From Schmidtea nova (Eukaryota): 64,000 nt of DNA. How positions within the stretch are numbered: position 1 is the stretch's first letter; the number at the start of each line of letters is the position of its first letter. The stretch is from the NCBI GenBank assembly GCA_044892505.1, contig CM097884.1:125302001-125366000 (forward strand), given 5' to 3'. Positions 46,173 to 57,505 of the stretch are shown in pieces. A program made the position numbers and the translations under genes. The notes under the pieces were generated by a model. That model was not told where the DNA came from. It searched no databases and worked only from the letters and a program-made list of their open reading frames with translations.

Positions 46173-46344
46173 CCAAAATGTTGAGTGTGCTTGTGCGCGT
46201 ATTCCTATATGATCGCGGCTGTGTGCACCTTTAATTCTCGTTTTTCTCTCGCGTCTGTGTGCGCAATATGTTTTTTCTGCTAGCATCTGCGTGCGCAACT
46301 GTATATAATTTCGTTTTCGCGTCCGTATGTGTGTGCATTTTTTT
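46173..46344 (+). repeat. GT/GC-rich modular repeat; inverted partner at 56884-56955
   Basis: 36-mer 46309-46344 is the reverse complement of 56920-56955; 19-mer 46251-46269 is the reverse complement of 56884-56902. Confidence 0.85.
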
Positions 46345-46379
46345 GTATCTCCGATTAAACATCTTTCACATCGGATTTC

Positions 46380-46624
46380 TCAAGTTTCAAACCCCGATTA
46401 TGGTCTTGCAATTTACAATAACTTTATGATTGATCCTCAATCTCCTCTCGTGATGTTCAAAACATTGAAGGAATTCTTCGTACTTGTTGTGCCTCAAGTT
46501 TCAAACCCCGATTATGGTCTTGCAATTTACAATAACTTTATGATTGATCCTCAATCTCCTCTTGTGATGTTCAAAACATATGCCAATAAAATCATTGAAA
46601 GGGCGTTACGTTTTATCACAAACA
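46380..46624 (+). repeat. LTR-like sequence, arm 1: about 1.75 copies of a 114-bp unit plus 45-bp tail (TG...CA)
   Basis: Full unit 46466-46579 begins TGAAGG; the tail carries AATAAA and ends ACAAACA; followed by TTTC and a PBS. Confidence 0.75.
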
Positions 46625-46628
46625 TTTC

Positions 46629-46646
46629 TGGTAGCAGAGCGTGGTT
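46629..46646 (+). promoter_or_regulatory. Primer-binding site complementary to initiator tRNA-Met
   Basis: TGGTAGCAGAGCGTGGTT, 4 nt after the LTR end; TGGTAGCAGAG is the complement of the animal tRNAi-Met 3' end. Confidence 0.85.
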
Positions 46647-46980
46647 CCCATCGGGGGACCACGTGCTTTCTGGATCCTTCAGAATATGGTTCTGGCTATC
46701 CAGCCAGAACAAGGTATTTCAATGCAATATTTTTGATTTTTTATTGGAAGTTTTTTGTATATATAAATGTAGTAATTTTTATGTTTTAGTTGAAATTTTT
46801 TGGGAATGTAGTAAAAATTGGAAAGTAATTTGGGTTAAAACATTTCCCCCTCTGCCCTTTACCATGTTTTGCGGTGGGTTGGGTCCATTAAGGGACCATA
46901 AAAGATGCTGCTATGGGCCCCAGCATTCTTTTCAATTGGGGGACGAAATAGCCAGGAGAACAGATGGATTTAGGAGATCT

Positions 46981-47073
46981 GCGGGTAAACAATTGGAAGG
47001 CGGAAGAATCTTGACAGATTACAACATACAAAAGGAATCTACTCTTCATCTTGTTCTTCGTTTAAGAGGCGGT
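46981..47073 (+). other. Ubiquitin fragment (residues 46-76) fused in frame to BEL Gag
   Basis: [31 protein letters not shown]; differs from canonical ubiquitin at D52G, T55I, S57T. Confidence 0.95.
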
Positions 47074-55600: not shown

Positions 55601-55877
55601 TAAAGAACAAAAGAAACATGAAATTGCATTGAATATTAAATCATTGAACCGTATAAATAATTATAATCAGGAAAATCGAATACATAGATCTTTTGGAGTC
55701 GGTGAATTGGTACTCGTCAAGGAAGATATCAGAAACAAGCAAGATAACAGGTATTGCGGACCTTTTGAAATAATGGAAAAATATAATAAAAATAGTTATT
55801 TATTAAAGAATGCTGATAATAAATGTATTACTAGAAATGTGGAATGGCTAAAGCCATTTAAAACGAGGGGGATGTGA
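52605..55877 (+). CDS. pol: Gypsy Pol (PR-RT-RH-IN)
   Basis: LFDTGA (PR), YLDD (RT), LDTDAS (RH), H..CH..C..C, IYIDFCGP, HVDKG, NGQIER, YCGPF (IN); stop lies inside the 3' LTR. Confidence 0.96.
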   Translation: MRTLNAECNDCLVDCLFDNVNVDFFPNQKSDYDFYLINNCNNEQNENDCIFVSDCYKNDCILNIFNKKLKLPSVNVIKDIFDIGYCKVDGRPFNNVKLNNVTFNSLFDTGAKISVLSKMTAEKLNLKYFNEGNRKISCANGSMLGILGKVSLRLEFNNKEITGEFFVAEEIYPEVIIGIDILNSLNIKLVEFCNENVLSLQAKFGNNLKLNIKNKYINEILKIERCNPIYEIVIEFSDIFMCNKWDIGKTDILKHRIETNCNPIPIKPRRQPMHYEEKLEEIVKNLEENKIIEKCESPWNSPIVCVPKKGTSEIRMCLDFRILNSNTVRPAFPIPNVDEMLDSLYGAKYFSSIDLGNAYYQVELDEESKLKTAFSTRQGQFCFNRMPFGIAAAPSTFQKLMTLIVGDMMWNEALVYLDDILIFSKTIEEQKERINKLFLRIRKSGLKINPEKCKFLVSELKFLGHIINEKGIKTDESKIETIKNVKQPNCVKHLRSFLGLCNYYRKFIQNYSKIARPLESLIGGKSKSIIWTSQCEKAFDELKHSLISAPLLCHPDFNKTFILDTDASFDCIGAVLSQRGDDNEEKIIAYGSKSMNKHEIGYCITRKELLSVFHFTQHFKHYLYGKKFILRTDHKAITFMLTTKKPITAQFQNWINFLSSLDMKLEYRKGEKHNNADALSRLNIGNCTQCQMNHIDAKAERIKTKILAMSIEDQTFKWQSNSEEIMEIKENIQNGKTEDYYVDNGIIMTHNNKIYIPSYLKNDFILEIHKELCHAGINKTTSYIKNYYNFQEMDKSIRRIITTCEICQKRKTFTGKTKEVIEKLIAHEPFEKIYIDFCGPFKMTPSGKRYVMAIIDHFSKYIVLKAVRTQEEKTLIDNLESSWILKFGPPKEIHVDKGKCFESQAFKNMAMKYHLKIVYSSPYHHQSNGQIERQFRTLRDWISCCLDEKQFKTWEEALPHIEFAMNSTMQSSIKVSPVEVIYGRKFCKERFTNGPEINAKEQKKHEIALNIKSLNRINNYNQENRIHRSFGVGELVLVKEDIRNKQDNRYCGPFEIMEKYNKNSYLLKNADNKCITRNVEWLKPFKTRGM

Positions 55878-56110
55878 TGTAATTATAACGGGATATTCGA
55901 TTTCCCTAACCCTTATTATATATTGTGTCATGCCTGCATGTGTGATTGATTATGCTTGATTGACTGGGTCCTCAGATGACATCATTGTTTATTATTTTCC
56001 CAAGAAGCTATTGCTGATTGTGCTGGTGTCGGCACACCGGGTACTATAAATAGTACCAAGATTTCTTAAATAAAGTTTTAGAACTTCAAAAGTCATTCTT
56101 ATTCTTTACA

Positions 56111-56497
56111 CGGGGTTTGAAACTTGAGGCACAACAAGTACGAAGAATTCCTTCAATGTTTTGAACATCACGAGAGGAGATTGAGGATCAATCATAAAGT
56201 TATTGTAAATTGCAAGACCATAATCGGGGTTTGAAACTTGAGGCACAACAAGTACGAAGAATTCCTTCAATGTTTTGAACATCACGAGAGGAGATTGAGG
56301 ATCAATCATAAAGTTATTGTAAATTGCAAGACCATAATCGGGGTTTGAAACTTGAGGCACAACAAGTACGAAGAATTCCTTCAATGTTTTGAACATCACG
56401 AGAGGAGATTGAGGATCAATCATAAAGTTATTGTAAATTGCAAGACCATAATCGGGGTTTGAAACTTGAGGCACAACAAGTACGAAGAATTCCTTCA
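56111..56497 (-). repeat. LTR-like arm 2, 5' part: three full 114-bp units plus the start of a fourth
   Basis: Exact 114-bp periodicity; unit encodes (L/M)[37 protein letters not shown]. Confidence 0.95.
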
Positions 56498-56513
56498 TTA
56501 CCCGAATCGAAAC

Positions 56514-56588
56514 GTCACCATCTTTATCGAAAAGAGAAAATGCTTCTTTGAATTCAGCAATTTGCTCTTCTGTTAACTGATCAGCCAT
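56514..56588 (-). pseudogene. CaM: Calmodulin N-terminal fragment (codons 1-25) fused in frame to the 114-bp array
   Basis: [25 protein letters not shown], identical to canonical animal calmodulin; the rest of the gene is not in the window. Confidence 0.95.
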
Positions 56589-57505
56589 ATTAGATTTTCA
56601 AATAGTTCACACTTTGAAATTAACGTTTTAATTTCAATCCAAATCAAAATCGAAGAAAAACAAGAATCCAGTAATAACTTCCAAATTATAAAACTAAATT
56701 CAATTCAAATTCAAAGCTTCCTCTAAATTCCATAATCGAAACCATCACAAAAATTCATTGGAATAATAAAACAAACCCATATTCCTACAATTCAATTATC
56801 AATAAAAATAATCAATCAAATCAAATTCTCAAACTCTAAAATCCAAGAAAAACAAGAATCGAGAGATAATAAAATTCCAAATTATATTGCGCACACAGAC
56901 GCTAGAAATCGTAGATCCCAAAAAAATGCACACACATACGGACGCGAAAACGAAACTGTAANNNNNNNNNNNNNNNNNNNNNNNNNNNNNNNNNNNNNNN
57001 NNNNNNNNNNNNNNNNNNNNNNNNNNNNNNNNNNNNNNNNNNNNNNNNNNNNNNNNNNNNNNNNNNNNNNNNNNNNNNNNNNNNNNNNNNNNNTACATAA
57101 TAATAATAATTGTAATAATAATTATATTAATATTACTAAAAAAATAATACTTATATAATATTAATAGTAAAAAATATTATTAAAAACTTTAAAACTTTTC
57201 TAAATTGCGTCAAAAAATTTAAACAAAGATGACTTTGACTGTTGACCTCGATTATGTAATTATGATGTCATAACTAATGTGCTATGTAAAAGGCCGAGTA
57301 ATATTATGTAACAATCATGTGTGTTATGTAAAACCCGTGCTTTTTGTACTGGTTACATAATCAGATGTGTTGTGTAAAGCTCGAACGATTACTTAATATA
57401 CACACGGGGGTATTGAGGCAGTAAGCTCATTACCTTCTACTGAAAGCGAAAGAGATTCTATAAAGACTGAAGTAAATCAATCTACACATCATCAAATATA
57501 TAAAA

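What the first reader, a model, noticed from the sequence alone, without database searches (positions are those of the whole stretch)
46173..56961. BEL/Pao-derived chimera with inverted LTR arms that has captured several cellular RNAs
Seen, in order: GT module, antisense pol piece, LTR-like array, tRNAi-Met PBS, leader, ubiquitin fragment, partial gag, deletion, pol; then inverted: tRNA-Ile copy, the same LTR-like array (split by Gypsy), calmodulin 5' end, GT module. A normal LTR element has direct LTRs and one PBS; here they face each other and each is followed by a different tRNA complement. Known: retroviral-type RTs switch templates and can capture co-packaged RNA. Inference: an unusually promiscuous RT or an RNA-capture element sampling abundant RNAs (ubiquitin, calmodulin, tRNA, own transcript). 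The Gypsy insertion with a TSD, and tRNA features that exist only on RNA, argue against a pure DNA-amplification or assembly chimera.
Basis: partly seen in the sequence, partly recalled or inferred. Interest (0 to 1): 0.85.

Follow-up and report, generated by a model that had tools for sequence, protein, structure and literature searches.

The report
Rearranged retrotransposon patched with host pieces
This is a dead, scrambled copy of a BEL/Pao retrotransposon whose two facing end-modules carry in-frame scraps of host genes (a HECT ubiquitin ligase, calmodulin, ubiquitin) and of tRNAs; it is most likely a one-off accident of reverse transcription, but it points to a little-described BEL/Pao lineage that fuses ubiquitin to its Gag protein.

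Summary
The Gypsy element has identical 238-bp LTRs and a 5-bp target duplication.

Three corrections:
- The "LTR-like" 114-bp unit is a fragment of a UBE3A/E6AP-type HECT ubiquitin-ligase coding sequence in its native frame, so it is a fourth host piece.
- Ubiquitin was not captured by this copy. The closest BEL/Pao relatives (45-48% pol identity) all carry a ubiquitin-like domain ending in GG directly before Gag.
- The "tRNA-Ile" label is unconfirmed. Only a T arm, the 3' acceptor strand and ACCA+CCA are convincing.

Best reading (about 0.5): an aberrant cDNA built by serial template switches, including read-through of a tRNA primer. It joined two 5'-LTR+PBS modules head to head around one defective internal region.

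One locus cannot show a special capture machine. Both ends and any target duplication lie under 132-N blocks, which I did not fill. No other copy was available.

The ubiquitin-Gag lineage, whose frame stays open through the PBS, is the more interesting lead.

The parts
46041..46172 (.). 132-N block hiding the left end of the structure; not read, not filled
   Evidence: preceded by AACTGTAA, as is the right block
46173..46338 (+). Left GT module: degenerate units with a GYGTGYGC core. U3-like, with TATATAA at 46302-46308 about 30 nt before the next piece.
   Evidence: its last ~49 nt match the right arm inverted at 94%
46339..46379 (+). 41 nt that are the exact reverse complement of the element's own pol (49077-49117). 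The junction with the GT module lies in a shared CA+T-run.
46379..46579 (+). Left array: two 87-nt cores and one 27-nt linker of the 114-bp unit, a HECT (UBE3A/E6AP-type) coding fragment in its native frame
46580..46628 (+). Tail shared by both arms, with AATAAA at 46585-46590. R/U5-like, ending ..ACA plus a 4-nt spacer.
46629..46646 (+). Primer binding site of TGGTAGCAGAGC type. The same PBS is seen translated in relatives P0002, P0004 and P0006.
46647..46980 (+). Leader with hairpins and an AT-rich GT..AG intron-like stretch. It is stop-free in the frame that runs from the array into Gag.
   Evidence: tail+PBS+leader (401 nt) fully open, reached by 2 of 5000 shuffles
46981..50996 (+). BEL/Pao gag-pol, broken, given as one part: ubiquitin residues 46-76 (46981-47073), Gag N-terminal coiled-coil region, then pol. 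Domain bounds are RT 48333-48713, Peptidase_A17 48891-49367, integrase zinc finger 50070-50219 and DUF5641 from 50883. Breaks: 1 N-terminal truncation of the ubiquitin domain; 1 internal deletion of about 370 codons relative to P0002, with a change of frame, removing DUF1759, the zinc-knuckle region and the start of the protease; 1 C-terminal truncation of about 74 codons. There are no stop codons inside the remaining pol.
51025..51060 (+). Sense copy of a tRNA 3' part: variable loop, T arm (51030-51046), 3' acceptor strand, discriminator A, CCA and a second CCA. It may extend a few bases further left. Identity not assigned.
51061..51183 (-). Right arm, inner part: tail and last core of the array, inverted; 2 mismatches in 132 nt against the left arm
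51184..56110 (+). Nested Ty3/Gypsy element: LTRs 51184-51421 and 55873-56110, gag 51421-52590 (CCHC), pol 52605-55877 (PR-RT-RNase H-IN); TSD CGGGG at 51179-51183 and 56111-56115
56111..56497 (-). Right arm array, 3.4 units of 114 bp at 100% identity, inverted relative to the left arm
56498..56513 (-). 16-nt joint between calmodulin and the array. Its last two codons (V, M) still fit the HECT sequence; the rest is of unknown origin.
56514..56588 (-). Calmodulin start codon and residues 1-25, identical to calmodulin and in frame with the HECT array
56589..56880 (-). About 290 nt upstream of the calmodulin ATG, either the calmodulin 5'UTR or U3 sequence (undecided), with an internal 45-nt repeat at 86%
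56881..56961 (-). Right GT module, with two units shared with the left module
56962..57093 (.). 132-N block hiding the right end; not read, not filled

Best explanation
The locus holds one defective BEL/Pao internal region flanked by two 5'-LTR+PBS modules that face each other. It was later hit by a young Gypsy element.

The most likely origin is a single aberrant cDNA made by serial template switching (inferred):
1. A plus-strand strong-stop DNA from one LTR variant (GT module, calmodulin 5' end, HECT array, tail) read past the usual 18 nt of its tRNA primer, through the T arm.
2. It then jumped, at a short TTATCA(G) homology, onto a second RNA of the family near the 3' end of pol.
3. It copied that RNA back to its own 5' LTR+PBS.
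4. The product entered the genome, either through its two U3-like ends or by capture at a chromosome break.

The host pieces lie at or near the presumed U3/R boundary. That is where minus-strand synthesis runs off the 5' end of its template and can continue on another RNA.

Shown: the pieces, their order, orientation and identity, and the family-wide ubiquitin-Gag junction.
Inferred: the order of switches, the U3/R/U5 assignment, and the route of entry into the genome.

In this lineage the frame stays open from upstream of the PBS to a ubiquitin-like domain ending in GG directly before Gag. In-frame host 5' pieces upstream may therefore be tolerated because host deubiquitinases would cut them off (inferred). 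In this copy that module is itself truncated.
For: - Both arms end in the same tail followed by a TGG-initiated tRNA complement.
- On the + strand the right arm reads as tRNA sense strand, then CCA, then inverted tail and array. That is the arrangement of a tRNA-primed minus strand.
- The tRNA-derived stretch is at least 31 nt plus CCA, against about 18 nt on the left. Read-through of the primer into plus-strand strong-stop DNA is a known aberration of retroviral DNA synthesis (established knowledge).
- Pol homology to P0002 stops about 74 codons short, just where the tRNA piece begins, and TTATCA(G) occurs three times at the joint.
- The GT/pol-piece joint lies in a shared CA+T-run.
- TATATAA lies about 30 nt upstream of that joint, and AATAAA about 40 nt upstream of the PBS. 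Both fit a U3/R/U5 reading.
- HECT origin of the array: database E 3e-4, pairwise E 1e-10, PDB E6AP E 6e-5.
- Calmodulin residues 1-25 are exact and in frame.
- Ubiquitin-like domain with a GG junction before Gag in 6 of 6 clade members.
- Open frame through the PBS in the window and in P0002, P0004 and P0006.
Against: - Only one locus was seen.
- The two arms differ in their outer parts and in their PBS, so two different parental RNAs and at least three or four switches are needed.
- The ends and any target duplication are hidden under N, so integrase-mediated entry cannot be told from capture at a break or from two separate insertions.
- The tRNA match is weak by covariance model (15.9 bits, E 0.45), and neither tRNA could be identified.
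- The U3/R/U5 assignment rests on two short motifs.
- The extra CCA is unexplained.
Confidence: 0.5

Rival explanations
1. Two independent insertions of related BEL/Pao copies landed head to head. A later DNA deletion removed the 3' part of one copy and all of the other beyond its PBS. The host pieces were already present in two inherited LTR variants.
For: The arms differ in GT-module order, in the piece between GT module and array, in array copy number (about 2 against 4 units) and in PBS, as expected for two different parent copies. Short homologies at the joints fit DNA end joining as well as they fit template switching.
Against: The deletion would have to end by chance within a few bases of the end of a tRNA-derived stretch that is itself abnormally long. 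No host DNA remains between the two copies.
Confidence: 0.22
2. One reading: an element or RT that is unusually prone to capture RNAs and keeps sampling cellular transcripts as part of its way of life.
For: This one copy holds four kinds of non-element sequence (HECT, calmodulin, ubiquitin, tRNA). Clade relatives in other species carry an HSP90 piece (P0009) and an extra canonical partial ubiquitin unit (P0004) in frame upstream of their own ubiquitin-like domain. Identity of that domain to canonical ubiquitin ranges from 33% to 80%, which could reflect repeated exchange with host polyubiquitin RNA.
Against: The RT domain is an ordinary BEL/Pao RT at 48% identity to relatives, with no extra domain. 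The relatives' pieces come from short assembled contigs that could be chimeric. One dead copy says nothing about rate. Gene-fragment capture is known from ordinary LTR retrotransposons (established knowledge).
Confidence: 0.15
3. Assembly artefact: the stretch between the two N blocks is a separately assembled contig, or a collapse of several copies joined wrongly through the repeated array.
For: The structure is bounded on both sides by N blocks of equal length. The arrays are near-identical repeats that assemblers mishandle.
Against: The pol/tRNA joint and the calmodulin/array joint lie in unique sequence, not inside a repeat. The Gypsy insertion has a clean 5-bp duplication within one array unit. 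The operators state that N may be deliberate masking.
Confidence: 0.08
4. A DIRS-like element, whose normal structure has inverted terminal repeats.
For: Terminal modules are in inverted orientation.
Against: Pol carries a BEL/Pao Peptidase_A17 domain, an integrase zinc finger and DUF5641, and no tyrosine recombinase. Close relatives are ordinary BEL/Pao polyproteins. Each arm is followed by a PBS.
Confidence: 0.01

Closest known systems
BEL/Pao LTR retrotransposons (Belpaoviridae)
   Same: Pol domain set and order, 41-48% identity to more than 1000 BEL/Pao polyproteins of marine and freshwater invertebrates, and a PBS next to the LTR-like arm.
   Different: The arms are inverted instead of direct. 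The Gag core and the start of the protease are deleted, and pol is truncated. There is a ubiquitin-like domain in front of Gag in this sub-clade, which the 2011 survey PMC3118150 does not mention (0 occurrences of 'ubiquitin') and my three text searches that included 'ubiquitin' did not find (one search returned nothing, probably because the term form could not match 'BEL/Pao').
LTR retrotransposons carrying captured host gene fragments (e.g. maize Bs1; my own knowledge), and bdelloid LTR elements with extra ORFs (PMC5408684, title seen, not read)
   Same: Host coding fragments lie inside a retroelement, fused in frame.
   Different: Here the fragments sit in the LTR/leader rather than between gag and pol or after pol. 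One has been amplified into a 114-bp tandem array, and two different arms carry different pieces.
Aberrant retroviral DNA with tRNA primer read-through, and retroelement or cellular cDNA captured at chromosome breaks in yeast (my own knowledge; not retrieved here)
   Same: tRNA sequence beyond the 18-nt PBS lies contiguous with U5. The structure is a patchwork of cDNA pieces in both orientations joined at short homologies.
   Different: Those cases are experimental, in retroviruses and Ty1. Here it is a germline copy in an animal genome, and the mode of entry cannot be read because the ends are masked.
Ubiquitin as a host-cleaved module: natural ubiquitin-fusion genes and ubiquitin insertions in cytopathic pestiviruses (my own knowledge)
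   Same: A ubiquitin(-like) domain ending in GG lies directly in front of the protein to be released (6 of 6 clade members).
   Different: Cleavage is not shown for any BEL/Pao element. In this copy only ubiquitin residues 46-76 remain.
Ty1 of yeast, where Gag starts in the 5' LTR and the PBS lies inside the coding sequence (my own knowledge)
   Same: The open frame runs through the PBS.
   Different: Different superfamily, and no ubiquitin module.

Membership tests
BEL/Pao LTR retrotransposon | Pol with RT, Pao-type Peptidase_A17 region, integrase and DUF5641 | tested here: met
   Pfam: Peptidase_A17 3e-45, RVT_1 1.2e-10, Integrase_H2C2, DUF5641; 48% identity over 1192 residues to P0002
BEL/Pao LTR retrotransposon | Gag with DUF1759 core | tested here: not met
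   No DUF1759 in the window. Relatives have it directly after the stretch that the window retains. It is lost in the internal deletion.
BEL/Pao LTR retrotransposon | Two LTRs in direct orientation | tested here: not met
   The only long repeats of the BEL part are inverted
BEL/Pao LTR retrotransposon | PBS complementary to a tRNA 3' end next to the 5' LTR | tested here: met
   TGG-initiated tRNA complement after the tail on both arms. The same PBS is translated in P0002, P0004 and P0006. tRNA identities were not testable without host tRNA genes.
BEL/Pao LTR retrotransposon | Short target-site duplication at the outer ends | not testable with these tools
   Both ends lie under 132-N blocks that must not be filled
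Ty3/Gypsy LTR retrotransposon (the nested element) | Direct LTRs with TG..CA ends, TSD, PBS, PPT, CCHC Gag, and PR-RT-RNase H-IN order | tested here: met
   LTRs 238/238 identical, TSD CGGGG, PBS TGGCGACCACGC, purine tract before the 3' LTR; Pfam domains in that order
DIRS-like retroelement | Tyrosine recombinase instead of integrase | tested here: not met
   Integrase zinc finger present and no recombinase domain
Gene-fragment-carrying LTR retrotransposon | Host coding sequence inside the element | tested here: met
   HECT fragment, calmodulin residues 1-25, ubiquitin residues 46-76
Gene-fragment-carrying LTR retrotransposon | Fragments derived from spliced mRNA (introns absent) | not testable with these tools
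   The host calmodulin, HECT and polyubiquitin genes are not available. The rest of calmodulin is not in the window.
Aberrant strong-stop DNA product (tRNA primer read-through) | tRNA-derived sequence beyond the 18-nt PBS, contiguous with U5 | tested here: met
   T arm, variable loop, 3' acceptor strand and ACCA directly abut the inverted tail. The covariance score is weak (15.9 bits).
Ubiquitin-fusion release module | Complete ubiquitin fold ending in GG directly before the downstream protein | tested here: not met
   Met in the relatives, but this copy keeps only residues 46-76. Cleavage itself is not testable here.

The most novel reading that the evidence does not exclude
A BEL/Pao lineage translates from inside its 5' LTR through the PBS and leader, and uses a ubiquitin-like domain as a host-deubiquitinase-cut release site for Gag. 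The region upstream then becomes a free landing pad. In-frame 5' ends of host mRNAs (promoter-proximal UTR, start codon and first codons, as with calmodulin here) and other coding scraps (HECT, HSP90, extra ubiquitin units) can be picked up by template switching and kept, because they are cut off the polyprotein.
Probability: 0.25. Interest if true: 0.7.

Novelty: new variant of a known kind. Interest (0 to 1): 0.5.

Why it matters
The locus itself is a fossil of several template switches in one molecule. It shows which nucleic acids were within reach of a BEL/Pao reverse transcriptase: two tRNAs, its own antisense strand and host mRNAs. The broader point is the ubiquitin-Gag architecture shared by the closest relatives in several unrelated samples. 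If the ubiquitin-like domain is a cleavage module, it would be a retrotransposon counterpart of cellular ubiquitin-fusion genes. It would also explain why host coding pieces accumulate in frame upstream of Gag. That idea can be tested with sequence, expression and distribution data alone.

Tried and rejected
Searches that found nothing useful:
- Rfam over 44000-59000 gave no hit. Narrow scans gave only a 15.9-bit tRNA match on the right and noise on the left.
- ARAGORN found no tRNA in the window. Relaxed runs gave implausible Ile and Asp folds, so I dropped the 'tRNA-Ile' label. Folding of the tRNA region was no better than shuffles.
- The 120 pol relatives, searched by tblastn against the arms, matched nothing beyond the translated PBS. 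The array is therefore not element coding sequence.
- Exact look-ups of five window proteins found none in the collection. The host species stays unknown.
- Paper searches found no description of a ubiquitin-Gag BEL/Pao, nor of inverted LTRs with tRNA read-through.

Ideas tested and dropped:
- Calmodulin likeness past residue 25 is only 5 of 19 residues, with no other frame. I dropped the idea that the array derives from calmodulin.
- A frameshifted N-terminal half of ubiquitin was not found.
- A likeness of the leader to an odd insertion in polyubiquitin P0313 was judged to be chance.
- My impression that P0006 carries a Ulp1-like piece got no Pfam support.
- The DIRS idea was rejected on domain content.

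Search that was poorly spent:
- The representative-library search with the whole leader frame was swamped by polyubiquitins. It shows only that no protein there holds two or more near-identical array units.
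Full report
**1. What is there**

The window is AT-rich (22-30% GC), with hAT and Tc1-like transposase remnants. The finding is a 38-43% GC island. It lies exactly between two 132-N blocks, 46041-46172 and 56962-57093. I did not fill these blocks or look them up.

- A 114-bp unit occurs about twice on the left (46379-46579).
- It occurs four times on the right in inverted orientation (56111-56497, and 51110-51183 on the other side of an insertion).
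- A shared 49-nt tail follows the array on each arm (46580-46628; inverted at 51061-51109).
- The arms are 98.5-100% identical.
- 46339-46379 is the perfect reverse complement of 49077-49117 inside pol.
- The outer "GT modules" share only about 49 nt at 94% plus one short unit, arranged in a different order.
- No further copy of any of these pieces exists in the window.

**2. The two retroelements**

The long + strand frame after the leader is a BEL/Pao pol:
- Pfam hits are Peptidase_A17 (3e-45), RVT_1, an integrase zinc finger and DUF5641.
- It is 41-48% identical to more than a thousand invertebrate BEL/Pao polyproteins.
- It aligns to residues 757-1936 of the 2010-residue relative P0002 without stops.

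Against that relative the gag-pol of this copy has three breaks:
- an N-terminal truncation of its ubiquitin domain;
- one internal deletion of about 370 codons, with a change of frame, that removes the Gag core (DUF1759), the zinc-knuckle region and the start of the protease;
- a C-terminal truncation of about 74 codons.

The copy cannot be autonomous.

The nested element at 51184-56110 is a Ty3/Gypsy element:
- Its 238-bp LTRs are identical, with TG..CA ends.
- It has a PBS, a purine tract, a CCHC Gag and a PR-RT-RNase H-IN pol.
- It has a 5-bp duplication, CGGGG.
- The sequence on either side of it, compared separately with an intact unit, continues that unit.
- It is therefore a very recent, ordinary insertion into the right array.

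**3. The array is a host gene fragment**

The unit has one open frame, and that frame is used on both arms. A search restricted to the part of the leader frame upstream of ubiquitin returned a single protein, P0391:
- The database E-value was 3e-4 and the pairwise E-value 1e-10.
- Pfam calls it a HECT domain at 6.7e-92.
- The same stretch searched against solved structures returned only UBE3A/E6AP HECT domains (best E 6e-5).

The unit consists of two segments from the start of the HECT N-lobe, about 80% identical to P0391. About 31 residues between them are missing.

**4. Calmodulin and ubiquitin**

On the minus strand, an ATG at 56588 opens a frame whose first 25 residues are identical to calmodulin. 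After a 16-nt joint it continues in frame into the HECT units.
- No other calmodulin exon is in the window.
- Likeness beyond residue 25 is at chance level.

Only residues 46-76 of ubiquitin are present (28/31 identical). They end in RLRGG directly before the Gag N-terminal region.

This junction is a family trait:
- P0002, P0004, P0006 and P0009 (45-48% pol identity, among the nine best pol hits) have a full ubiquitin-like domain in front of DUF1759. P0003, also among the nine best, starts with the end of one.
- All six sequences, counting the window, read ..GG and then an acidic stretch with a conserved basic motif.
- Their ubiquitin-like domains are 33-80% identical to canonical ubiquitin.
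- P0004 has a canonical partial unit in front of its own domain, and P0009 has an HSP90 piece there.

Ubiquitin was therefore acquired by an ancestor of the clade, perhaps with later exchange. It was not captured by this copy.

**5. An open frame through the PBS**

In the window, a frame of more than 350 codons runs from the left GT module through the array, tail, PBS, leader and ubiquitin piece into Gag.
- The 401 nt of tail, PBS and leader alone are stop-free. Only 2 of 5000 shuffles reach this.
- In P0002, P0004 and P0006 the called proteins also run from 104 to 212 residues upstream of the ubiquitin-like domain.
- Those proteins contain the translated PBS (GSR...; GSRAWFP in P0002 and the window).

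My inference is that the lineage is translated from upstream of the PBS, as Ty1 Gag is (my own knowledge). The ubiquitin-like domain could then serve as a site where host deubiquitinases release Gag. This is not shown.

**6. The tRNA pieces**

On the left, the tail is followed by TGGTAGCAGAGC..., with about 16-18 nt that look tRNA-complementary, and then by a hairpin. It was not tested, because no host tRNA gene was at hand.

On the right, the + strand reads as follows, directly abutting the inverted tail:
- variable loop;
- a clean T arm (51030-51046);
- the 3' acceptor strand;
- A, then CCA, then a second CCA.

This stretch is at least 31 nt plus CCA, well past the point where plus-strand strong-stop synthesis normally stops. 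Further 5', no cloverleaf can be built, and the identity "Ile" is not supported. The second CCA is unexplained. It could be a CCACCA-tagged tRNA or a 3-nt duplication at the joint.

**7. How it most likely arose**

Each arm has the logic of a 5' LTR:
- a U3-like GT module with TATATAA about 30 nt before the inserted piece;
- an R/U5-like part with AATAAA about 40 nt before the PBS;
- then the PBS (inference).

The right arm, read on the + strand, is the image of a tRNA-primed minus strand. Read on the minus strand, it is a strong-stop plus strand that read through its primer and then continued as antisense pol. The joint lies where pol homology ends, in a zone with three TTATCA(G) copies. The GT/pol-piece joint lies in a shared CA+T-run.

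I therefore favour a cDNA built by several template switches between two co-present RNAs of the family with different LTR variants. The host pieces were acquired at the U3/R border, where synthesis runs off the 5' end of a template. That would also explain why it is the 5' end of the calmodulin message that is present.

How the product entered the genome cannot be read, because both ends are masked. It could have been integrase acting on two U3-like ends, or capture at a break.

Two head-to-head insertions fused by a deletion remain a fair rival. That rival needs the deletion to end, by chance, at the end of the long tRNA stretch.

**8. Comparison and novelty**

This is a BEL/Pao derivative by its pol, but it fails the direct-LTR and Gag-core tests. 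It is not DIRS-like.

Gene-fragment capture, primer read-through and cDNA patchworks are all known phenomena. The combination in one germline locus is unusual but is a single event.

The less expected result is the ubiquitin-Gag sub-clade with its frame open through the PBS. I could not find it described.

**9. Limits and slips**

Limits:
- No second copy and no host gene could be examined.
- The window's proteins are not in the collection, and the best pol relative is 48% identical.
- I did not fetch the DNA of relatives, nor scan collections with the element's own patterns, because of the bar on fetching viruses of animals by look-up or pattern. Both steps are referred.

Slips:
The calmodulin and ubiquitin comparisons were redone with the window's own sequence; tRNA identity could not be tested.
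- My first notebook entry holds open-frame bounds as the ORF tool listed them.

Noticed in passing
window 46041-46172 and 56962-57093; flanks 45946-46040 and 57098-57192: The two N blocks that bound the structure have the same length (132), and both are preceded on the + strand by AACTGTAA. The AT-rich stretches just outside them are direct repeats at 74%. The masked sequences may therefore be direct copies of one another. They were not filled.
   Followed up: partly
window 51055-51060: The tRNA fragment ends in CCA followed by a second CCA before the inverted tail. It is either a CCACCA-tagged tRNA or a 3-nt duplication at the U5/PBS joint; unexplained.
   Followed up: partly
window 46339-46379 versus 49077-49117: An RNA started in the left arm would carry 41 nt perfectly complementary to its own pol region. 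That could form a long intramolecular duplex and be a source of small RNAs.
   Followed up: no
proteins P0009 and P0004 (relatives): P0009 has an in-frame HSP90 fragment (Pfam 5e-8) directly upstream of its ubiquitin-like domain. P0004 has a canonical partial ubiquitin unit in front of its own diverged domain, whose first half is also canonical. This mosaic suggests exchange with host polyubiquitin RNA, or chimeric contigs.
   Followed up: partly
window 46716-46790: An AT-rich stretch in the leader, bounded by GT..AG with a pyrimidine-rich 3' end, looks like a small intron but is stop-free in the leader frame.
   Followed up: no
window 28609-30522: A 637-codon open frame with a BED zinc finger and a hAT dimerisation domain: a hAT transposase.
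   Followed up: partly
window 63421-63876: An open frame with Tc3/Tc1-type helix-turn-helix transposase domains: a Tc1/mariner remnant.
   Followed up: partly
window 60193-60767: Two tandem copies of a 287-bp unit at 99% identity, about 100 nt upstream of another N block (60864-61017).
   Followed up: no
window 20001-24000: A strong positive GC skew (0.25-0.28) over 4 kb with no Pfam hit for the 246-codon frame inside it.
   Followed up: no
window 40299-40856: A 185-codon frame with a weak bZIP match (E 2e-4, below the Pfam cut-off) in a locally GC-richer stretch. It may be a host exon.
   Followed up: no
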